From: Vitrella brassicaformis CCMP3155
Taxonomy: Eukaryota > Protista > Chromerida
Assembly: GCA_001179505.1 (NCBI GenBank)
Contig: CDMY01000954.1
Coordinates: forward strand, 62,001 to 126,000
Length of the DNA stretch: 64,000 nucleotides
Reading direction: 5' to 3'
Made by a program: the position numbers and the translations under genes. Numbering within the stretch: position 1 is the first letter of the stretch; every line of letters starts with the position of its first letter. The notes below the pieces were generated by a model that was given only the letters and a program-made list of their open reading frames with translations, was not told the DNA's origin and made no database searches. Shown here piece by piece: positions 1 to 14,300 of the stretch.

Positions 1-3000
1 ATGCGTGGTCCTGACGAGGCCGTTGTACGGATCAGAAACGTCAAGCCGGGCTCTTTTGAGTTGAAGCTCGACGAGCCAGCGCCCTGCAGCGACCAAATCC
101 ACGGAGAGACGCCCATCGACTGGATGGTAGTGGAAGCCGGCGTGTACCCCCTCGACACGGAAATGGGTCTCACAGTGGCCGCCGGCACCGTGCCAGTGGC
201 TGGAGACAAGAAGTTTGTGCAAGTCGCCTTCCCTCCTGAGGCCTCATTCACCGACGCGCCCATACTCCTCGTTCAAGTGGGTGAAGGGAAAAGGGGGCCA
301 GACAATTTAAAAGGTCTAAAGCTGTTATATGTGCACATGCAGGTCCAGAGCTACACGAGTGGTCGCGTATTTGTGAAGCAGCGTGTTAAGGGCCTCAGCT
401 CCAGTGGTTTTGAGGTGGCTCTCGAGACGCAGGGGGAATCACTGGCAGACCCCAAGAACGAAGCCAACTTCGGGCAGGAGGTCCTTGGCTGGGTGGCCTT
501 CTCATATCCGCAGAAGGGCGTGCTGGAGGTCAAAGAACTGAAGGCAGCGATCATTGCAGGCATCACGGTATGTGACTCGCAGAGAATGTGTGCTTGCATT
601 TTCCTTTCTCTGCTCATCCATCCATCCCTTCAGCCTGCGGAGGTGGATGAAAAGCCTTACAAGATCAACTTCGGCGCCAGCATGCCGGACGCGCACTTAT
701 TCGCGTCGATCGTCACCTACAATGGATGGGACGCTGCACGTATGCGCATACACACGTATAGGCGTCTTGCCACCTGACCCACGCACACACACATGGGGCG
801 CATTGCTGATTTGTTGCAGAGCTGCGTGTTGCCAAGCAGGATGAGCAGGGTGCGGAGATATTCATCCAGGAGGAGACATGCAGCCCATTGTAATCGACCG
901 ACCAACCACAGATAGAGCCACATGTCGCCGCTTCACCGTAATTGTCTGTTTGTGTTCTTGCTCATTCAGGGTCCTTCCACACCCGAACAGGGAGAAGGTT
1001 TCGTGGATGGTGAGGCCGAAGTGGTCAGGATACTATATACACCAAGATGTCGGGTGAACTTCTGTCCATGCAGGCCATGGGCGCCCTGGAGTCGACTCCC
1101 CTTACCACAACACAGACGCCAACAACACAAGTGCCCACGACTACTGCCCCACCTGCCGCGACGACTCAGGCGCCATCTTTTGAAACACCGCAGCAAGAAG
1201 GGCAGCCGCCCACCACACAAGCCCCTGGAGAAGAACAAGCCGAGAATGAGGGCAACCAAACCTCTCCGACGGGGCCACCAGAAGCTGGTGCTCCCGCCAA
1301 TGAAACTGCGGCACCGCCCGAGGAGGTGCCCGAGGGCACGCATCCATTCAACAAGACCGAAGAAGAGGAGAAGCTCGACGAGAGAAAACAAGAGCTTGAG
1401 GCCAACGAATCAGAAGAAGGCGCAGAGTCCGAAAAGACAGCCAAGAAGCCTGAGAACGAGACCGCAGCAGTTGCGCCGCCACACGTGCTGCCATCCGAAT
1501 GCCAGCGCAGCCCCCGGCTGCACAAGGCGTGCATCGAGGCATGTGAGGACATCGGTGGGCTGCTGTCCCAAAGTGCGCCGAATCCCAATGCGTGCTGCCC
1601 CAAGACATGCGGCACGTGCGGCAGCAACGACTGTGAGAAGCGCCGAGGCGGTCCCGACAGCTGCTGCCCTGCTAAGATTGTGGCCGCAGGCAAGATATGC
1701 GGGCAGGACACCGACAAGCCGCCGTGTCTCATTGCTGTCGAAGGCGCGTCAGCCAATGAGACAACGGGCGAGCGCAACAGGACAGACCTCGAGGGAAAGC
1801 CTGAAATTGAACCCCCCAAGGAGCCTGTCTGGTTATTCGACTACGCCCGTGCCAGTCATGACCCGGGCCCGCTGATTCCCGATGGGACCATTCGCAAGGT
1901 GCAGTGCCGCCAGTCGGTCGGCTATCGGACATACCAGGGCATGGAACCCGAAGCGCAGATCACGTGCATTGACGGCGTGTGGACATTCCTCCCCCTCATG
2001 TGCAAAAGTAAGTGGCTGAGATACGCCAGTAGACGAGACAGAAGGTCACTTTCTCTCTGTGTGTGTATGTGTGCTTTTCAGGGGACTGTCCTCTTCTGTA
2101 TTTGGCAAAGAATGAGAATGATCCGGGCCCAGGAGACGACACGGTGTACATCCCTTACCAGTTCGAGCTCAAAGACCCAGCACAAAGCATGAAGTACGTC
2201 AAGACGGGTGATTCCGATCAGGAGCTGCCCGTCCACGGCGTGTCCATCACACTGAGGTGCCGTGACAGCGACATTCCCGGCCAGGCCTGGCACGCCGTCG
2301 TGGGCGTCGACGGGCCAAACGCTGGCGTGGATGACGCCTTCGGGAGAATGAAGTGCGTCAATGGGGAATGGTCGGCAATCACTCTCGTCTGCGCAAGTGA
2401 GGTCACACTTGCAAGAGAGAGAGATTCACCTCAAGTTCACTTGTTGGGTCTCTCTCTCATTGGTTGACGCACGCAGAGGAGTGCTCCAAGACGGATTTCC
2501 TGGAGCTGGTCCCAGCCAACGCATGGGCGATGAGCGGTCTCATGACTGACGCGACGGCCCTGCCACCCGAGGGCGGCCTCTGGGACAGCGCACTGGCCGA
2601 GACGTTCCTGCACGGCAGCATCCTAAGCATCGCCTGCAACACGGACTCGTCGCCCGTGTACAAGTGCACAACCGCCGAGGGGCTCGAGTCGGGCGAGAAC
2701 GTCACGGAGGTGGTGGTGCCTGAGGCGAAGAAACCTCCCAACACAGTCCTGACCAATGAGACCATCGTCTGCAAGAACGGCACCTTCACGCCAACCACCA
2801 TGAGATGCGAACGTGAGCAGAAGACACACTCTTGGACGTAATGTCTCTCTCGCTCTGTGTGTCTGTGGGCAGGGATGTGTGAGCTTCTGCCACTCGAGAA
2901 GCGTGTACAGCAGTCCAACGGGTACCTGGTCAAGACGCTGATCGACCCCTACTACCTGGCGAGGGCAAGCTGCCGAGCGGGGGCTGTGCGGCCATCCTGT

Positions 3001-6000
3001 GCGGACGGGCATCCACTGCCCGACAGACCTACCACATCAAGAAGACCAAGACGCCGAGCCTCGTCTACTGCGTCAACGGAAACTTCTCCGCCATCGAACT
3101 CTCATGCAAACGTATGTACGCGTCACTTCATTGGCCTGCCTGCTCACGGCAACACGTACACTGTTTGCGTATCTTTCATATTCTGTTGGCGTGCATCCAT
3201 ATATCCATCCATCCATACAGAGGAATGCGGCGAGTTGCCCGTGTCGGACGTGCGCTACATCGCCCTGCAGCACAACGGCCTGGCGCCCGGCAGCACCACT
3301 CCCCCTGATGTGCCCATCCGGCTAGAATGCCAGCCTGGCTACTCGCCATCCGTGGGCAGCGCCCTCGCCCTTCAGGGCAAGCACTCGGTCGGGATGGGTA
3401 TCAGCCAGGCCTTTGAGGAGATCCTCTGTGAGGACGGCGCCTGGTCGCAAGTCACGCTCGACTGCCGAGGTGTGCCTGTATGCACGAGAACACGGCCCAA
3501 TCAATCTGTCTTCTTTCTTTTTCTGGGTTGTGCTTGCGGCGTCCGTCCGTCCTTCAGCCGATTGTGGCGAGCCGCCCTTGCTGACTCCTGCCGAGGCGTA
3601 CGACGTACGTGGTGAGGGCGTGACGCATGGGTCTTTCCGCGACATCCAGTGCGCCGAGGGCTACACACCAGGCGTCAAGGGCACCGCAGCCGCCACCACC
3701 ATACACTGCCATGACGGACAGTGGACCATGAACCGCATCGTCTGCTACAGTGAGTGAAGTCTAGTGTGTGTTTGTGAGCAGTCATGGCTTTCGTCTGACA
3801 TCTCGGACGGATGCGCGTGTCATGTCCTCCAGAAAACTGCCCCGAGTATGGCACGTCGGTGCCCATGGACAATACCAGGATGAAGTGGAGTTATGAGACT
3901 TCATGTAAGGCCGACAGACAGACAGACACAAGATAATCTAACGTTGTGAGTGTGTGCCAGTGCGGATACAACGGAAGGTCGAAGGCGCTGCTCAAGAACA
4001 AGAGAGCGACGGCACTGCAGCTGGATCGGCAGCCAATGCAACCCAGTTCATAGACCAAGGCAACGACAACGCTACCACAAACAACACACACGGGAGTGGT
4101 GCTGCTGCCAATGAGTCGGAAATCGACGAGATGGCCCACGGCAGCCTGGTTCGTGTGTGGTGCGACCCTGATGGCGGCTACTACCACCACCGTGATCCCC
4201 AGGCCTTCATGCACCTCATATGCTTCGACGGCGAGCACACGCGACCCGACCCACTGCTCTCACTCGTACTGCCACTCGAATGCAGAAGTGAGCGAGACAC
4301 GACCACCAGCGCCCTGTCTCTCGCCCACCAGCATGATTGCGTGTGTTGTGTTGGTTTGTTAGGGGCGTGTGACAGGACCCCCGAAGAGACATACGGCATG
4401 ACGGCCGAGAATGGCTACCGCACACTGGATGAGGAGACCTCGACGTCTGAGTCCACCATGTACCACGGCACCCTGCGCAAGATCGGGTGCCTCACCAGCA
4501 CCCACACCGCCGAAGTCAACTTCGACGCCAAGAGCAGTGGGGCGGACAAGTGGCCGGGTGAGATGATCGAGACGGCCGCCCACGACGAGGCGGGCCAGTG
4601 GGACCCAATTGATGTGCTTGAATGCGACGACGGCGAATGGGTCGACCGCAATCTCCAATGCTGGAGTGAGCGAGCAAGCAAGGGAGGACCCACAGCAACA
4701 AGACGGCATACTCATCTCTGTTTGTTTGTCTGTCTACCTGTCTGATTCCTTGATCAGGGAAGTGTCCCGAGTACAAGCCGCCCAACCCAGAAAGGTATCA
4801 GGTGTTGGTGCCCGAGGGGGAGACCATCCCCTTCAAGAAGTTCCCGACTGTCGCACACGGCACTAGGAGACAGATACAGTGCAATGCCAAAAGGCAAGCT
4901 GCCGACGAACCGACCCACACCGACACCCACACACACACACACAGGCAGACAAACAAGGGGGACCGGTTGGCTGTGGTGCGGTGGCAGGATTACGAGCGGC
5001 ACTTTGAAGGGCTTCCGGTCGGGTTTCTACAGCCCTCAGATGATGCTGCAGTTCGGCCCTTTGTTCCTCGACAAGAAGATCGGCGAGAAGGCACAGATGG
5101 TGGAATGCAAAGACGGCGAGTTCGACACGACCACACTCGACTGCCAAAGTACCTAGCTGAGTGGCGCCTTTCCTTCGTGTGACTGACTGGCGCAAACGGC
5201 ACTTTGGCTGCCTGGCTATATCCGCGTGTGTGTGCAGAGATGTGTCCATCGATTGGCGACAAAATGCAGGAGCTGTGTAGGGACTTCTACCTGCAATTGG
5301 GGCCGGCAGACCAAGACGAGATGGGGCCGTGTAAGGGCAAAGGGGGCAAGGCGAAGAATGACTGCATCAATGCACGCTGCAAGGACCTCAAGGCGGCCCA
5401 TACGCCTTATCGGATCATCAAGTCGCTCATCGACCCCGACACCGCCACCACGAAGATCGTCGGCGACCCTGACCCGACCAAGATGGACACTTTCCCACAC
5501 TTCTCGAGAAAGGTAACGCACCCAGCCGGGAGCATCCACCGACCGCACTCGGCTTTCGTGGAATCTTGTGTCGTGTCTGTGTGTCGATCAATTGATGTGT
5601 GTTGCAGCCTGCCGACGTGCACCTGGTGATATGTGACGAGTCCAAGGGTTATGCGCCAACACACAGGGCCGTGGTGGATCTGTCCGACCCCGAACATGAC
5701 CCCTTCGCCTCCAGCATCGTGGGCGCAATCGATTGCTATGACGGGCAGTGGTCAGACCTACCATTCAGATGCAAAAGTAACCAAGCAACCAGAGAGAGCA
5801 CTAGCAGCACATATGGGCAGTGCATGTGTGTGCCGATCGGAGATGCTCTCTATGGGCGTGTGTCTTCCTCATCAGAGGGCTGCAAGGGTCCGTTCGATTC
5901 GGAGCAGACGTCCAACATCAAGACCGTCATCATGGGGGGCGAAGTCGATATCACCACAGTCGGTGGTGAGGCAGTCTGGTTCAAGAAAATGGCGGCGCTG

Positions 6001-8510
6001 CAGATCGACGGCGCAATCGCCCACAATTTCACCGGCGGGCCCTTCGACGACACACTCGACGATCAGGATTACTATTACTATCCTTCGGCTGACGTCGTCG
6101 ACGTGCATGACCTAATGGATGCCCTGGACACAGATGAGCTGTCATGGCGCAATCAGACATCCAACGACGCGACGGTCCCCTCCTCGTTCCGCGAGGCCCT
6201 CTCGGCGTTGCAGGACAAGTCTTCATCAAGCAGAAGGAGATACAGTTCGTGCAGTTGCGACGCAGAGAAAAAGACGCTGATGAGCCTCGATAGCGAGATC
6301 AGCCGTTTTAGGACGGACATCCAACGCCTCAAAGACCAGGCCAAGAAATCGCGTGAGGAGCGGGAGAAGATCGAGAGGGAAAGGGCGCGGCGGGCCGGGG
6401 CCGAACAACACAAGGGGCAGTTCGGTGTCCCGTACAGCACAGCGGAGCTGAAGTCAGCGCGCAAGTACACGGGGCCCCTCAACACCCGCATGTGGCGACG
6501 TCTCAAGAAGGACTACTTCGGCATGGACTACGTCATCAACAAGAATTCAAAGACCACGAAAAGCTTCATCCAAGAGGAGAGCACTGAGGAGACCCTGACG
6601 CACCAACAACAACAACAGAAGGCCGACCCGAGGACCTTTCTGCAGACCGAGCACACACAGACACAGACCCTCACTCAGCCCTACCCAGCCCGTATAAGGT
6701 GCAGGAGGAGATACGGCCAAAGGAAGGTATGCAATGAGTGCTGCCCCGAGCGCTACAAAGCCCAGATCGCTCAAAAAAGGGGAGCAAAGGAGTCTTTGTC
6801 GGCGGAAAAGGCCACGGTGGTGAAAAAGGCTCAGGAAGCGGCGGCGGTGCTCAACGCGCTCAAGTCCAAAAGCTGGGGCCTCATCAATGACGGCTTTCAT
6901 ATAATGTGGGGCCCCGGTAAGCACACGACTGACGCAGAGAGGGATACACACGGACGCAGAGCAGAGGACGTGTGTCTCTGCCTTCCTTTTCTTTCGTATG
7001 CGATGGGGTGGCTCACTCAGGGTGTTGTGACTTTCGCAACTGTTGGTTGAGGCGTAGCGTTGCCGGAAGGATGAACTACTGCACCAATTGGTACTACGGC
7101 GAGGGCACATGGGTGGTGATAGACATTGGTCAGCACGGCGCATCCCCTACGCCGGACGCCCAGGGCATTGAGGTCTACTCCATCTGCTCAGCAGGCCGCT
7201 TCACCGACCCAGTCATCCCCAGCACCTATCAGATTAGGCTATGATCCCCCCACATCCAGCCAAGAAGACCACCGAAGGGCGCCCCATTTTCCAACTGACC
7301 GACCACAAATTCATTCCCCAAGAGACGATCGAGGAGACATATGCGTCCCAAAAGGCAAAAGTAACAAGTCAGAATTGCATCGACGGCGGCACGTCGGTCC
7401 ATGTAGCGGGCCGGTCCTCGCCAGTGGCCCTTCGGCACGTCAGAGTGGGCGACCGAGTCCTCTCATGGCGGCCGACATCACGGGGCGGCAAGGGACAGCC
7501 CACATATGCCGAGGTCTACTTCAGGCGAAGCTACAGCAAGACATGGGCAAGGGCCACAACGCTTGCGGTCGGCAAGTTCCTTCCCCCTTTGGTGCTGTCG
7601 CCCAACCATCGGCTACCGGTCTGCCGGCCGAGAGGTCACAACAGCAGTGTTGCTTTGTCCTGGTCTCGTTATGGGGATGATATTTGTGAGGATATCATTG
7701 GTCGACTGGGAGATGCGGGCAGCTATATCCTGAGACATGTGGCGGCTCATGAAGTGTTGGCTGGTGACGTGCTCGTGACGGTTAATCATTCTTCTCTTGT
7801 GGCGAGGGGGATGGAGGTCTCTGCAGCGCTGCAGGTAGGTATTCACCCACATGTTCTTACCGAGACATGTATACGTGTCTCTGTGTTTTGTGTCCAGCAT
7901 CGTGGGTTTGAGCTGGTCCACACGACTACTGGCTACATGCTGGCTGGAGGGGCGGTCGTGACGGACTCCGATGAGCCCCTCGACGAATTTGTGCCGTGGT
8001 CATTTATCAACAACCTTGATGCCAGGTACTTACTCGGTTTCCCTATGCGCCACATCAGGCATCCAACGCCACTATGACTGACACCCCCCTCTGCCCGCTC
8101 CAGGTTGCTTTATGAGTTGTGGGGTCGTGATGGGGTCGAAGGTGCATGGTTCCAGACCTTCTGGAGGTACTTACGAGCAACAAAGCCACCAAGAGAAACC
8201 GAATGGTCAGTCCTTGTTGCTTCTGTGGTGTCTCAGGGCTGTGGCGGCTTACGATGAGGGCATGCAGGCCACTGTCAGAGATGTCCTGCATTCTCTGAGG
8301 CCATTTGTTCCCTTTCCTGTCATTTATGCCGTTTCGCTTTCGGCTGCCCTACTGTTTTGGCTTTGCATTTTTGGCATCTTCGCTGTGCCTCTGTTGATAG
8401 TTATTGTGGCATGTCGATACACATCTTCCTGCAGGAAATATGTGCGCGACCGCAGGTCGATCGCCATGTGGCTTGCCAAGCTCTTCAGGATTAAGGCCAA
8501 GGCTGCATGA
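1..8510 (+). CDS. Giant multi-exon surface protein (5' end probably upstream of window): H-type-lectin-like repeats, T/P/E-rich linker, Cys-rich module, ~10 CCP/sushi-like modules, coiled coil, Hint/Hog domain, C-terminal TM anchor
   Basis: ORFs 1-777, 1047-2192, 2063-2467, 2464-2841, 2857-3615, 3413-3757, 3954-4745, 5204-5629, 5599-7050, 6972-7244, 7241-8077 and 8112-8510 can be joined by GT/GC-AG introns. I checked phase at several junctions (2965-3026, 6917-7020, 7835-7897, 8026-8103, 8167-8236). A recurrent motif C..HG(S/T)..C..C.(D/N)G.(W/F)...C occurs about 10 times. The join at 7129-7260 is uncertain (see findings). Confidence 0.75.
7376..7975 (+). other. Hedgehog-type Hint (Hog) autoprocessing domain
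   Basis: Block A begins CIDGGTSV (Cys at 7376) and continues LRHVRVGDRVLS...GQPTYAEVYF. The block B equivalent is LVLSPNH (His at 7607). The C-terminal GFELVHTTTGYMLAGGAVVT resembles Hog G.YAPLT..GT..V.GV.AS. There is no terminal His-Asn, so it is not an intein. Confidence 0.8.
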
Positions 8511-8945
8511 GTGCTATGGGCCACTTTATGGGCACTCGCAACACTAGATGCGTCCATGTGCGTGCTTTGGTAATATAGGCTTACCGACCAGTGCCTTCAG
8601 TTTGACATTCGAGTATCATCAACCTTGTGCAGGCAGTGTCCCCTTCTCTGTGTGTGTCCAGCCAGTCATGTGTGTGCATCGATTACATGTCTCTGCCGAC
8701 CCCTCAGACACGCAAGGCATGCAAGCTGGTGTGTGTGGCGGCAATCAGTGAGTGCAGTGACACCCATTCAATATCCCCTCCGCCTGAATGGCTGTGCGTC
8801 GAGGAAGACCATTGGCAGCCTAGCAGCACGACCAAAAATACACCATAGCCATCGACCAAAGCGTCCCAAGCGAGTGAGTGAGCTCAGTAGGGCTTCCCTG
8901 TGTGGAGCAGACATGACACACAATGAGTTTGCTTTCACATGGTGG

Positions 8946-9946
8946 CTATACGCAGCTCTCCTTCCGCTCACCGATCAGAGGCTGCATGAGCCATCTCTGC
9001 TCAGCCATGTAGCGAGGGTAATGTCCCTGGTACCCCACGACCCCCAGCCTGGGTCCGGACGTCTTGCTCGCTTTGCGTCCTCTGCCTGCCACCGGTTTGG
9101 CGCCCCCGCTGCCCTCCTGCAGCCCCAGGATGCCCTTGGCTGTCTGTGTGATGGGAGGGAAGGGCGGGGGCGGCTGGCCCTTGCCCAACAGCTGCATGTG
9201 CTTCTCGACGGACTGACGGCTGGCCTTCTGCTGTAGGTATCGCTCACTGGCCAGCTGCTGGGCGACGTTGCGGGTGACTGAGAAGCGGCCGCCCAGTACA
9301 CCTGGTTCAGACAGGCCCGGGATGTGGCCTACACGAGAGACGAGAGACAGACAGACAGACAGACAATGGGAAACAAGTCTCCGTGTGTCCATCGACAGCC
9401 GCAATGCGTACCTGTGTATCCCGCAACTCCAGTAGACAGCCGTCCCACGCTCCTTCTCCGTCTCTCCGAGTCGGGCGGCAGCAGAGACGTCCCCTTGACC
9501 GCCAGCCTGTCCAAGGCAGCACTGCCCCCCTTGACACGCCGCTCAAGGACAAGTGCAGCCGCCTCCTTGGTCCGGACAAACGAACTCCCACAGATGTTCT
9601 CGGAGGTGACGGCGGGCACGTGGCCTGCATATCCAGTGATGGCGCCTTTCATGATCCTGTCGAGTTTGGGCATGAATGACGATTCGGAATTGGACTTGGC
9701 GAGCACCGTCCGCTCGTACTTGGAAAATGGCTTCATTATCTGAGCTGACGGCAGTCCGGCCTTATGGCTGGGTTCCATCGAGGCCGCTGGTGCGGTAGAC
9801 TCTTCGGGAGCATTGGCAGGCGGCTGGGAGAAGTAGTGTGCGGTTGGATCTTTGATGTCTGGAAGGGCCTGGGCACCATTGGTTGGCGGAGCCCGACACT
9901 CGGCAGCGGCTTTGGGTGAATCGGAGGGCTCTTCCCCGGGCTGCAT
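8946..9946 (-). CDS. PYG/GYxGxxP-repeat protein, FAM166/DUF2475-like candidate axonemal microtubule inner protein
   Basis: ORF 9329-9946 is spliced (intron 9329-9411) to ORF 8946-9404. Three motifs result: GYAGHVP, GYTGHIP (across the intron) and GYQGHYP. An upstream exon cannot be excluded. Confidence 0.6.
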
Positions 9947-11342: not shown

Positions 11343-14300
11343 TCACTTCCTCTTGGCGCCGCCTGCGTTTGCGGCCCTTGGGTTGTTTGGGTTGAGTGAT
11401 GGGTAGTCTTCCTCCTCGTCCTCGCCGACATCGCCGTACCGCCACACGTTGACGTGCGACTTGCGGGCCGACTCCTCCTCCTTCTGCAGACGCGCAAACA
11501 ACTGCAAACCACACACCCACACCACACACCACACACACATGTAGGTGGGCTGAAGGGTGGTGGCTGGCCGACCCGGTCGACCTACCTTGGTGTTGGATTT
11601 CTTGTCCAGCCTCGCGAGGCCCTGGCGGACGAGCAGCTCGTTCAGCGACGCAGCGGGCGGACCACCTGCGGGCACAGACAGGGAGGCCGGTGAGAGGTGA
11701 AAGGAGGTGTCCCCCCTTGAGGCGTACTGTGGTTGTGTGCCTCCTCCTCGGTGAGGATGACGTGACGCTTGCCCGACTGGTCGATCCTCTCAACCTTACA
11801 GACAGACAGACAGGCAGGGGCGGACACACACAAACACACCGCTGCAGCTGACTGACGTGAATGCAACGGTGTGTTGGTACCTTGCAGTGGTAGAGTTTGC
11901 TGGCCGTTGAGTTGCTGAGGTACTGCGCCGCGTCCATCTCCATGTCAGGCGGCTCCAGCAATCCTATACTCACACACATACACAAACGCATCCATCCATC
12001 CATCCGCACAAGTGACGCCCGTGTCCCCATATGCGTGTGGATATATGTTCATACCTGCGAGAGTGCAGTGTTTGGCTTGGGGCGGTTTGGCGGCCGTGGT
12101 CAGGTTCGGTGGGCACCGACACAAACGAGACAACGGCAGACCCTCGCCATTGCCGTAGTCGATATACAGCACCTAACCCCACACACAGTCAAGTCACGCA
12201 CACACGTTTTCTTGGGTGTGTTGGAAGACCCCGTGTGTGTGCCAGCAGTGCTGTGGTGCTTACCGTGACTTCTTCTGTGAGTGTGTCTCTGCTCTCGACC
12301 CTAGCACGGTACCACTGCTGGTCGTCAGTGAATTTGCCGAGGACGATTTCGCCCTTCCTGGGTGGCCCGCCCGCCGAGTACTCATCGCCTGGCTTCATCT
12401 CCATCTCTGACAGCTGGCCGATGATTGCCTCCAATGTCTGATGTGCACACACACGCACACACACATACACACACACATACATCTGGGTGTCTGTGGGAGA
12501 GGGGCTGGGCGGGAGTGCTCACAGGGTTGTGTGTTTCCTGGATGTAGAAGGAGGTGATTGAGTTGATGTGCACCACAGCGACTGATGTGAGTGTGTCGTC
12601 GACCTCCCGGTCCTTCTCGTCCTCGATGCCGTTGGACGCCATGTCGGGCAATGACCACATCTGCACCCACAGAACACCATTACACATACGGCGCTTTGGT
12701 GTGGGTGTCGGAGGGGAGGTGTGGGTGGGTACCTTGAGCTTGGCCTGTTTGGCTTTGTTTTCCGCCGCGAGCAGCTCGTCCCGATAAGGCGACTGCTGCA
12801 CACTGAAACCCACAGTCACGGCGTAACCTAACAAACCACACAGGCGACACCCACACAACACACACCCCGATAAGAGAAAGTATGTGACAAAGCAGCAGAC
12901 GTGCAAGTGGGGAGGGGGGGAGGGACGTAAGTACCTACCGAGTTCGAGCAGTTCTACGGCCATGTTGATGCTTCTGTTTCTCCACATGGAACCGATGAAG
13001 TTGCCGCCCCGGTCACACGCGTCCACACACACCGTCACGTCATGCTGCAGCACATGCTCCCTGACAGACAGACATGCACACATACACACACACAGACAGC
13101 ACCATGCACGTGTGTGGCGAATTGATGGGAGCAAAATTCGTGGCTGCATACATACCTTGCGAATGCGATCGACTCCTCTGCGAAGGGCTCGTTGTCGCCT
13201 TTGGGTTTGCCGCCTGCCACGGTTGGCCGGGCTGTCATCGGACACTTGATGCCTTCACGCACACACGCACGCCCACACACGCACACGTGCCCTTCTTTGG
13301 CTGTGTGTGTGTGTTTGCTGTCTGTCTGCCTGTCTGTCTGTCACACCTCCAAGTGAGAAGGAGATGGCGATGTTTTGCGATGGGACCCGCAGCTTGTACC
13401 TGCCCGCGTTGAAGACGTGCTCGACGACGGCATCGAACTTGCCCAGACGGACCAACGAATTCTCAAAGGTGCGCGCCTAGGTGACAACCACAGCAGGCAT
13501 CTGTGTGTGTATGCGGGCGGCCGCCGTTGTGTGTTGCAGACGTGTACCCTGGCGGAGTTCTGCGGCCCCAGGAGGTCGTTGAGGCGATGCTTCGGCGCCT
13601 TCTTCTCGTCCCTGTCAACACACACGTCCATCCATTCCATCTCTCTCCCCTCTCTGTTGTGTTATATACTCACCCATGCAGCCCCAGCTTCTTCTCGACT
13701 GCCTCCTTCTCCTTCTCTACCAGGATGTCATAGTTGCCGGCGCGGTCGTCATCGGCCCGGTGCGACATGACCCGCGCGTAGCCCGCCGCCACGAGCATCT
13801 CGCTGAAGTTGCCGGCCGCCTTGGGGTCCTCGATGATGAGCGACACGTAGTGCATCCGGCCTTGCGCGTCACTCGCCGGCGGCGGGGCCGCACCACTCGC
13901 TGCACCCAACCGTCAACACAGACACAGAGAGACAGAGGGAGAGGGATCCACACCTGCGCAGATGGGGCGTGTGTGGTGTGGTATATGCACACGCACCTGA
14001 TTGAATGGGTTCCCTTGCGTAGTCGACGACGACCTTGACCTTTTTGTTGACGAGTTTCTTGCGCGCGAACTCCTTGGCGTCGAGTGACCATGGCTCGTCC
14101 TCCTTGCCGCGGCCGCCGGGGCGGGGGGCCTTGATCGACGCCAAATACAGCCGACGCTCCTGGTGAGTCGTCAGGTCCTGCTCAACAGACAGACAGACAG
14201 ACAGCGGTAGAGGGAGATACACAGGTGTGTGCGTGTGTGTGTGTTGGCGGGTTGGGTGTTGTGTAGGTTACGATAACAGTGACGCTGTCTGCTGAAGAGA

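What the first reader, a model, noticed from the sequence alone, without database searches (positions are those of the whole stretch)
1..8510. Membrane-tethered, self-cleaving Hog-domain adhesin: hedgehog-like release of a giant lectin/sushi ectodomain
Seen: hand splicing links a roughly 2,000-aa modular ectodomain to a Hint domain with Cys1 (..SQN|CIDGG) and an SPNH block B. Two small introns (8026-8103, 8167-8236) then lead into an SRR-like segment (DARLLYELWG...AWFQTFWR), a long hydrophobic anchor (VIYAVSLSAALLFWLCIFGIFAVPLLIVIVAC) and a basic tail. Established: Hedgehog Hint domains cleave before Cys1 via a thioester and attach a nucleophile (cholesterol) to the released N-fragment, and non-Hedgehog Hog proteins occur in protists including alveolates. 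Inference: autoprocessing would shed the adhesive ectodomain, possibly sterol- or wall-conjugated, from a TM-anchored Hog stub. That could build a coat or wall, or signal. I do not recognise this H-lectin + CCP + Hog + TM combination as characterised.
Basis: partly seen in the sequence, partly recalled or inferred. Interest (0 to 1): 0.8.

Follow-up and report, generated by a model that had tools for sequence, protein, structure and literature searches.

The report
Membrane-anchored Hedgehog-type giant adhesin, probably broken
This stretch of the coral-reef alga Vitrella brassicaformis holds one copy of a small gene family that joins a giant sugar-binding/Sushi surface protein to a Hedgehog-type self-cutting domain, here followed by a membrane anchor, but in this copy the reading frame linking the parts is most likely broken.

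Summary
The sequence features are real. A Hint module starts at Cys (7376-7378) with an SPNH block (7598-7609). It is followed by conserved helices, a 32-residue membrane anchor (8319-8414) and a basic tail.

Hint identity rests on three results:
- Four of six paralogs match Pfam Hint (best E 5e-8).
- The family profile hits only Drosophila Hedgehog-C in the PDB.
- The predicted fold matches 1AT0 best.

The anchor is not an accident. A second paralog has an unannotated last exon, at the same intron position, encoding the same helix, anchor and tail (E 6e-8). Three other paralogs end without an anchor.

The in-frame link from ectodomain to Hint depends on an unverified 343-nt intron. All ordinary introns here are 56-99 nt. 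This one hides 171 nt with full exon-like codon usage (0 of 20,000 shuffles) in another frame, ending in a stop at 7242. A second long "intron" hides another exon-like piece. A third -1 break lies upstream of the window. No spliced RNA was seen.

The Hedgehog general base (D46) is Arg here, so sterol transfer is doubtful.

The scan found this family before on other DNA, mostly as broken copies.

The parts
1..1009 (+). Exons for three beta-rich repeats that resemble H-type lectin domains. These are residues 778-1016 of public model P0001. The gene continues upstream of the window.
   Evidence: Exact exon map. Atlas features: 23 of 30 best clusters carry PF09458, score 0.96. Pfam was blank, the word search was blank, and the single-sequence fold failed at pLDDT 33.
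1074..2007 (+). Long exon holding a Thr/Pro-rich mucin-like linker, a Cys-rich module and the first in-window Sushi-like module.
   Evidence: Translation. Composition and Cys pattern were read by eye. No Pfam match.
2082..5776 (+). Array of about eight Sushi/CCP-like modules, mostly one per exon or exon pair. Modules are joined by C-x-x-x-C linkers.
   Evidence: C-x-[DN]-G-x-W...C motif list. The module at P0001 1648-1715 matches C4b-binding protein CCP at E 0.005. Pfam Sushi gives only E 0.053.
2986..3270 (+). 285-nt 'intron' of the public model. It hides an exon-like stretch (3027-3110/3111, frame 2) encoding the second half of a Sushi module, and it cuts off the start of the next module (better exon start 3221). 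Joining 2985 to 3027 needs either a 41-nt intron or a -1 frame break near 2948.
   Evidence: Translation and module logic. Codon log-odds 13.8 over 28 codons, against an intron-window maximum of 7.3 and 0 of 20,000 shuffles. Sliding frame profile.
5876..6916 (+). Last ectodomain exon: a charged, probably coiled-coil region with no recognised domain. It ends at donor GTAAGC (6917).
6917..7259 (+). It is the longest intron in the gene.
   Evidence: Intron lengths are 56-99 nt for 20 introns, then 285 and 343 nt. It is the only canonical GT-AG route that keeps the frame.
7071..7244 (+). Exon-like stretch in frame 2 inside that 'intron', ending in TGA 7242-7244. It aligns weakly with the Cys/Trp module that precedes the Hint in all paralogs. 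The Hint frame opens at 7238, so the two frames overlap by only 4 nt, as a 1-nt deletion would give.
   Evidence: Codon log-odds 21.7 over 57 codons (exon median 19.5; real-intron maximum 9.1; 0 of 20,000 shuffles), GC3 0.77. The frame profile switches from frame 2 to frame 1 at about 7240 with no intron-like gap. Alignment A4. DNA is identical in two runs' contigs.
7260..7375 (+). Linker before the cleavage site. It is coding-like but not conserved in paralogs.
   Evidence: Codon score +13.3 in frame. The DNA alignment with the P0002 locus is unalignable upstream of Cys1.
7376..7378 (+). Cys1 codon, the predicted nucleophile. The scissile bond is Asn2579|Cys2580 of P0001.
   Evidence: Cys is present in all six paralogs.
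7376..7834 (+). Hint module, first exon. Block B SPNH lies at 7598-7609. Arg at 7526-7528 aligns with the Hedgehog general base D46.
   Evidence: Pfam PF01079 at E 0.017-0.025 for this copy; 4 of 6 paralogs match, best E 5.2e-8. The family profile against the PDB hits only Hedgehog-C, E 0.008-0.02, with a residue-level alignment.
7835..7897 (+). 63-nt phase-0 intron inside the Hint (GTAGGT...CAG).
   Evidence: A 21-residue gap in the match to P0001. Exon map.
7898..8025 (+). Hint module, second exon. It holds a motif J-like VVTDSD (7955-7972), with Asp at the place of Hedgehog Cys143, and the start of the conserved post-Hint region.
   Evidence: Alignment A1 has invariant D-x-D-x-P-x-D. Foldseek best match is 1AT0 at E 4.6e-5. 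In the VIA second look, all but two weak helical rows (Z 4.3-4.7, on the C-terminal helices) are Hint superfamily, Z 5-7.3.
8104..8297 (+). Adduct/sterol-recognition-like region: two conserved aromatic amphipathic helices. It is encoded by exon 8104-8166 and the start of the last exon, split by intron 8167-8236.
   Evidence: This is the most conserved part of the family. Helix-loop-helix in the model. No sequence match to the Hedgehog SRR.
8319..8414 (+). Hydrophobic membrane anchor of 32 residues.
   Evidence: Kyte-Doolittle 19-residue maximum 2.93. In-frame codon score +4.5 against -17 and -7. Homologous anchor in the P0003 locus.
8415..8510 (+). Basic cytoplasmic tail and stop codon.
   Evidence: GC3 0.76, as in coding sequence. 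The positive charges after the anchor fit an N-out/C-in topology (inference).

Best explanation
This is one copy of a Vitrella-restricted family of giant secreted Sushi/lectin proteins that end in a Hedgehog-type (Hog) autoprocessing domain. It belongs to a subtype in which the Hog is followed by a helix, a single membrane anchor and a basic cytoplasmic tail.

Inferred ancestral mode of action:
1. A type I membrane precursor enters the ER.
2. The luminal Hint makes a thioester at X|Cys1, using Cys1 and the S-x-x-H block.
3. The thioester is resolved, detaching the giant ectodomain from a Hog-anchor stub. Resolution is probably by water or a non-sterol nucleophile, because the Hedgehog general base is missing in this subtype.

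The copy in the window is most likely no longer encoded as one polypeptide. The ectodomain frame ends at TGA 7242, just before the Hog frame opens. The pattern is that of a 1-nt deletion. Two further frame problems exist, near 2948 and about 3.5 kb upstream of the window. The public single-gene model bridges the two in-window problems with atypically long introns.

Shown: the domains, the conservation of the anchor, and the frame breaks. Inferred: topology, cleavage, and loss of function.
For: Family and organism:
- An exhaustive phmmer search of 1.84 billion representatives finds only six proteins, all from Vitrella brassicaformis CCMP3155.
- A profile word search and a metagenome scan add none.

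Hint identity.

Catalytic residues: Cys1 and S-P-x-H are invariant in six paralogs.

Anchor:
- It is conserved with P0003's unannotated last exon, with the same intron position and phase. BLASTP E 6e-8.
- P0004-6 lack it.
- P0005 and P0006 have signal peptides.

Breaks:
- The stretch 7071-7241 is exon-like in frame 2 (21.7 against an intron maximum of 9.1; 0 of 20,000 shuffles).
- The frame switches at about 7240.
- The two longest introns are 285 and 343 nt, against 56-99 nt for the rest.
- A hidden Sushi half-exon lies at 3027-3111.
- A -1 frame switch inside a Sushi module splits the public models at L002 ~9940.
- The DNA is reproduced without differences in contigs of two runs.
- Sister copies are also broken: an in-frame TAG in the P0002 locus and a frame shift in the P0003 locus.
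Against: - The annotated 6917-7259 intron has good GTAAGC and poly-C/CAG signals and keeps the frame. The annotators used RNA-seq intron hints (PMC4501334), so it may be real.
- More than 2,100 codons in the window stay open with normal codon usage. Any decay is therefore recent.
- The break near 2948 could instead be a 41-nt intron.
- No reads were laid on the upstream break.
- The RNA status is unknown. One possible RNA contig starts exactly at the last exon's acceptor (8235-8431).
Confidence: 0.6

Rival explanations
1. The gene is intact as annotated. The 343-nt intron is real, and the protein is a working membrane-tethered Hog adhesin that sheds or lipid-anchors its ectodomain.
For: - The public model is continuous and matches the window exactly.
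- The splice signals are canonical.
- Cys1 and S-x-x-H are intact.
- The anchor is conserved in a paralog.
- The tail has coding-like codon usage.
Against: - An exon-like stretch with a stop lies inside the needed intron, and the intron length is an outlier.
- The model starts in the middle of a Sushi module without a signal peptide, behind a -1 break.
- The model skips half a Sushi module at 2986-3270.
- D46 is Arg and Cys143 is Asp.
- No RNA support was obtained.
Confidence: 0.25
2. The locus works as an alternative-splicing switch. Using acceptor 7020 gives a soluble ectodomain that ends at 7242 without Hog or anchor. Using acceptor 7259 gives the Hog-anchored form.
For: Both acceptors are canonical and share donor 6917. 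Each keeps an open frame up to a defined end.
Against: - No RNA data are available.
- In the paralog whose DNA was read here (P0002 locus) the pre-Hint module and the Hint lie on one exon in one frame. The two-frame layout therefore looks derived, not designed.
- Other breaks in the same gene point to decay.
Confidence: 0.08
3. The Hint module in this subtype is catalytically silent. It serves only as a structural, membrane-proximal stalk.
For: - The general base D46 is replaced by Arg, Gln and Arg in the three anchor-type copies, while the secreted type keeps Glu.
- Cys143 is Asp.
- Pfam recognises this copy only weakly.
Against: - Cys1, S-x-x-H and the acidic motif after the last strand are invariant across all six copies. 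That would not be expected for a dead domain.
- Hog domains of mosses and red algae also carry Ser, Thr or Asp in place of the motif J Cys (PMC2362128).
Confidence: 0.15

Closest known systems
Hedgehog C-terminal autoprocessing (Hog = Hint + SRR/ARR) domain, e.g. Drosophila Hh-C (PDB 1AT0, 6TD6)
   Same: - It is the best and only PDB sequence match of the family profile, and the best Foldseek match.
- It has an N-terminal Cys nucleophile and a (T/S)-x-x-H block.
- There is no intein-type C-terminal Asn with a downstream nucleophile.
- A helix-loop-helix region follows the Hint.
   Different: - It is very divergent: below the Pfam threshold in this copy.
- D46 is Arg and Cys143 is Asp.
- The residue before Cys1 is Asn, not Gly.
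- The cargo is a giant Sushi/lectin protein rather than a Hedge signalling domain.
- A membrane anchor and cytoplasmic tail follow the Hog.
Non-metazoan Hog proteins of alveolates, red algae and mosses (Burglin 2008, PMC2362128); HINT-domain extracellular proteins of chromerids, Cryptosporidium and Gregarina (Woo 2015, PMC4501334)
   Same: - They are secreted proteins with lineage-specific N-terminal parts followed by a Hog.
- The motif J Cys is often replaced by Ser, Thr or Asp.
- The phylogenetic neighbourhood is the same.
   Different: - Those described are small proteins. None in the passages read has a giant Sushi array or a membrane anchor after the Hog.
- No sequence relative outside Vitrella was found here.
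Self-cleaving juxtamembrane modules of animal surface proteins (SEA domain of membrane mucins, GAIN/GPS of adhesion GPCRs). This comparison rests on my own knowledge and was not tested here.
   Same: This is a functional analogy only. In both, an autocatalytic acyl-shift module sits between a large adhesive ectodomain and a membrane anchor.
   Different: The folds are unrelated. In those modules the two fragments stay bound non-covalently. A Hint thioester would instead release the ectodomain or transfer it.

Membership tests
Hint superfamily / Hedgehog-type Hog domain | Hint fold | tested here: met
   AlphaFold model (pLDDT 59, so modest). Foldseek best match is 1AT0 at E 4.6e-5, TM 0.54, followed by BIL domains and inteins. 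In the VIA second look, all but two weak helical rows are Hint superfamily, Z 5-7.3; 1AT0 gives Z 5.7 with 121 aligned residues and 22% identity.
Hint superfamily / Hedgehog-type Hog domain | Sequence match to the curated family model (Pfam PF01079) above its threshold | tested here: inconclusive
   This copy scores 14.6-15.2 bits against a cut-off of 29.7. Four of six paralogs match, best E 5.2e-8. The family profile hits only Hedgehog-C in the PDB, E 0.008-0.02.
Hint superfamily / Hedgehog-type Hog domain | Nucleophilic Cys (or Ser) as first residue of the module | tested here: met
   Cys at 7376-7378. It is present in all six paralogs.
Hint superfamily / Hedgehog-type Hog domain | Block B T-x-x-H | tested here: met
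   S-P-N-H at 7598-7609. Ser, Pro and His are invariant in the family and align to T69-P-A-H72 of 1AT0. Ser replaces Thr.
Hint superfamily / Hedgehog-type Hog domain | General base Asp46 (D303), needed for sterol transfer | tested here: not met
   It aligns with Arg (7526-7528) in this copy. It is Gln or Arg in the two other anchor-type copies and Glu in the three secreted-type copies. The role of D46 is from PMC9163320.
Hint superfamily / Hedgehog-type Hog domain | Motif J S-C-Y-A with Cys143 | tested here: not met
   The motif is T-D-S-D with an invariant Asp (placement made by eye against the Hedgehog sequence). Burglin 2008 reports the same Cys-to-Ser/Thr/Asp change in moss and red-algal Hogs.
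Hint superfamily / Hedgehog-type Hog domain | SRR/ARR region after the Hint | tested here: inconclusive
   Strongly conserved aromatic helices follow the Hint. No alignment to the Hedgehog SRR was obtained.
Hint superfamily / Hedgehog-type Hog domain | Cargo and Hint in one secreted polypeptide (signal peptide, continuous frame) | tested here: inconclusive
   The frame is continuous only through the doubtful 343-nt intron. The public model lacks a signal peptide and sits behind a -1 break. Paralogs P0005 and P0006 have signal peptides.
Hint superfamily / Hedgehog-type Hog domain | Autocleavage at Cys1 | not testable with these tools
   Needs biochemistry.
Intein | C-terminal His-Asn followed by a Cys, Ser or Thr extein residue | tested here: not met
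   The module ends in V-V-T-D-S-D-E-P with no Asn-nucleophile pair.
Sushi / CCP repeat (PF00084) | About 60-residue module with four Cys and a conserved Trp after Cys3 | tested here: met
   Eleven regex matches in P0001; ten are C-x-[DN]-G-x-[WFY]...C motifs at C-x-x-x-C spacing (two of them in the part of P0001 that lies upstream of the window), and one (1804-1824) is a looser match. The best PDB matches are C4b-binding protein, CR1 and factor XIII B, at E 0.005. Pfam itself gives only E 0.053. A source names the paralogs Sushi domain-containing.
H-type lectin (PF09458) | Match to the family model or fold | tested here: inconclusive
   No Pfam match. Atlas features point to H_lectin clusters at 0.96. 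The fold prediction was unusable.

The most novel reading that the evidence does not exclude
Despite the apparent -1 breaks, the locus is expressed as one type I membrane polypeptide, through the annotated splice or some form of recoding. The membrane-tethered Hog then acts as an autocatalytic device that sheds the giant lectin/Sushi ectodomain or transfers it to a membrane lipid or wall component. This would be the first Hog domain placed upstream of a membrane anchor. It would be a protist counterpart of the SEA and GAIN self-cleaving modules of animals.
Probability: 0.2. Interest if true: 0.75.

Novelty: new variant of a known kind. Interest (0 to 1): 0.45.

Why it matters
Hedgehog-type autoprocessing is understood almost only from animal Hedgehog. 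What Hog domains do in protists is an open question. A Hog that stays tethered to the membrane by its own anchor, next to sister copies that lack the anchor and keep an acidic general base, gives a natural pair for experiment. It could show whether Hog domains outside animals hydrolyse, lipidate or attach their cargo to a wall.

For this locus the practical lesson is about annotation. The public single-gene model probably hides frame breaks behind over-long introns. The intact secreted copies (P0005, P0006) and the anchor-type copy P0003 are better starting points for experiments.

Tried and rejected
- **RNA evidence.** A possible RNA run covered only 8235-8431 and 8472-8700. No splice was shown.
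- **PDB search with the single Hint ORF.** Nothing was found. Only the family profile worked.
- **Homologs outside Vitrella.** The exhaustive phmmer search, the profile word search, a gapped DNA pattern around the 7240 break and a Hog-profile scan of JGI metagenomes all found nothing beyond Vitrella.
- **H-lectin region.** Pfam, the word search and a single-sequence AlphaFold run (pLDDT 33) gave nothing usable.
- **Other in-frame splice routes from 7021-7241 into the Hint frame.** Many GT/GC-AG pairs exist. None combines a GTA/GTG-type donor with a YAG acceptor as the other 22 introns do.
- **Programmed -1 frameshift at 7240.** No slippery heptamer was seen by eye, so this was rejected as unsupported.
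- **Stop-loss origin of the anchor.** Rejected because the P0003 locus encodes the same tail.
- **Anchor exons downstream of P0004-6.** None found.
- **Continuity across the upstream break.** A tblastn of paralogs showed only generic Sushi similarity.

On the joined step: I sent no hand-joined spliced sequence to any search or fold tool. The public protein P0001 was used by reference. Exons were concatenated only inside local scripts, to train codon statistics.

Full report
**What is there.** The first 8.5 kb of the window is the 3' two-thirds of a multi-exon gene on the + strand. An exhaustive phmmer search with the Hint ORF found six proteins among 1.84 billion representatives. All six are from Vitrella brassicaformis CCMP3155.

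The best hit, P0001 (2886 aa), is this gene's public model. It maps exactly onto 23 exons in the window, with 21 GT-AG introns and one GC-AG intron. The gene starts upstream of the window.

**Domain identities.**

*Hint.* Pfam recognises this copy only weakly (E 0.017-0.025, below threshold), but four of the six paralogs match PF01079, best E 5.2e-8. A profile of the six Hog regions hits only Drosophila Hedgehog-C chains in the PDB (1AT0, 6TYY, 6TD6; E 0.008-0.02). An AlphaFold model of P0001 2560-2886 (pLDDT 59) has 1AT0 as best Foldseek match (E 4.6e-5), followed by BIL domains and inteins. In the VIA second look, all but two weak helical rows are Hint superfamily, at Z 5-7.3.

*Catalytic residues.*
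- Cys1 (7376-7378) and S-P-x-H (7598-7609) are invariant in the family.
- In the HMMER alignment, the Hedgehog general base D46 pairs with Arg in this copy. It is Gln or Arg in the two closest paralogs and Glu in the other three.
- Cys143 of the S-C-Y-A motif corresponds to an invariant Asp (the Cys143 placement was made by eye).
- The roles of these residues are taken from PMC9163320.
- Burglin 2008 (PMC2362128) reports the same motif J replacement in algal and moss Hog domains, and lists Hog proteins in dinoflagellates, Cryptosporidium and ciliates.

*Ectodomain.* The Sushi reading is supported modestly. The H-type lectin reading rests on language-model features alone.

**The membrane anchor is a family feature.** After the Hint come two strongly conserved aromatic helices, then a 32-residue hydrophobic stretch and a basic tail, in this copy.
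- Paralogs P0004, P0005 and P0006 stop 14-32 residues after the helices, and no anchor exon lies downstream of them.
- At the P0003 locus the public model stops by reading into a GTAAGC donor.
- An unannotated exon at L003 8171-8438 sits at the same intron position and phase as in the window. It encodes the same helix, anchor and charged tail (BLASTP E 6e-8).
- The P0002 tail is degenerate.
- In-frame codon usage of the anchor and tail also argues for coding.

So there are two subtypes: anchor-type (P0001, P0003, and a decayed P0002) and secreted-type (P0004-6). P0005 and P0006 carry signal peptides.

**The link is doubtful in this copy.**
- Twenty of the 22 introns of the public model are 56-99 nt. 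The other two are 285 and 343 nt.
- Both long ones contain stretches with full exon-like codon usage in a different frame:
  - 7071-7241 scores 21.7. The exon median is 19.5, the best real-intron window is 9.1, and 0 of 20,000 shuffles reach it.
  - 3027-3110 scores 13.8. The intron maximum is 7.3, and 0 of 20,000 shuffles reach it.
- A sliding profile shows the coding signal passing from frame 2 to frame 1 at about 7240 with no intron-like gap.
- Frame 2 ends at TGA 7242 and frame 1 opens at 7238.
- The hidden stretch aligns, weakly, with the Cys/Trp module that directly precedes the Hint in every paralog. In the P0002 locus, whose DNA I read, that module and the Hint lie on one exon.
- The hidden stretch at 3027-3111 is the missing second half of a Sushi module. 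The public acceptor at 3270 also cuts off the start of the next module.
- Upstream of the window, P0001 begins in the middle of a Sushi module. The preceding 1065-aa Sushi model ends 75 nt earlier, and the coding signal again shifts by -1 at that point.
- Contigs of two sequencing runs reproduce the window without a difference across 2701-7455. So the in-window breaks are not a quirk of one assembler. These runs may be the assembly's own data.
- The sister loci are also interrupted: an in-frame TAG in the P0002 locus and a -1 shift in a poly-C run in the P0003 locus.
- Earlier notes of this scan describe several other copies as broken, and one or two as intact.

**Reading.** The most likely account is a recently disabled copy of an anchor-type Hog adhesin gene, which the gene predictor bridged with over-long introns. 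The annotated splice cannot be excluded. Its signals are canonical, and the predictor used RNA-seq hints. I could obtain no spliced reads. The only possible RNA contig on the gene covers the last exon and starts at its acceptor.

**Mechanism, for an intact member of the subtype (inferred).**
1. The signal peptide takes the precursor into the ER.
2. The anchor and basic tail give an N-out/C-in topology, with the Hog at the luminal face of the membrane.
3. Cys1 and S-x-x-H form the thioester.
4. The thioester is resolved, freeing the ectodomain and leaving a Hog-anchor stub.

Without an acidic residue at the D46 position, sterol activation as in Hedgehog is unlikely in this subtype. The secreted subtype keeps Glu there.

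**Novelty.** Hog proteins in alveolates and HINT domains in chromerids are on record. The gene model is public, and the scan has already met this family on other DNA, once with a membrane anchor noted. What is new here:
- an independent demonstration that the anchor is conserved between two loci;
- the split into two subtypes that differ at the general-base position;
- the evidence that the public model of this locus hides frame breaks.

Noticed in passing
window 7376-7545 and L001 about 13366-13535: The DNA of this gene and of paralog P0002 (same contig; P0002 ends about 19 kb before this gene's start) is about 96% identical for some 170 nt, starting exactly at the Cys1 codon and including synonymous sites. 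It is unalignable just upstream and decays downstream. This looks like a gene-conversion tract. A matching 848-nt variant contig was seen in the read runs.
   Followed up: partly
L003 8171-8438: The P0003 locus has an unannotated last exon encoding a helix, a membrane anchor and a tail. The public model ends by reading into the GTAAGC donor.
   Followed up: yes
window about 2948 and 7240; L002 about 9940; L003 about 3885: All four frame breaks seen in this family here are of the -1 (single-base deletion) type. Two of them (window about 2948 and L002 about 9940) lie just before the same CGAGGGCAA string, at homologous positions of two Sushi modules. This may be chance, a mutational bias or something systematic. 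It was not resolved.
   Followed up: partly
L001 about 9932: In the P0002 locus an in-frame TAG inside a Sushi module separates the 1569-aa and 1025-aa public models. At the homologous site, P0003 lacks that codon.
   Followed up: partly
window 2701-8700 (runs X10-X15 and X17): Marine sediment metagenomes from 2023 and 2025 hold from 7% up to 59% of the sampled words of this stretch. This suggests Vitrella or a near-identical strain in sediments.
   Followed up: no
window 8884-9946, minus strand: The neighbouring gene (301 aa, no Pfam family) converges on this gene's 3' end. High-depth contigs of runs X16 and X20 at 8472-8700 probably belong to its transcript rather than to the Hog gene.
   Followed up: no
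window 4894-4987 and other introns: One GC-AG intron, and several introns carrying CA/CACA microsatellites that recruit many unrelated contigs in read mapping.
   Followed up: no
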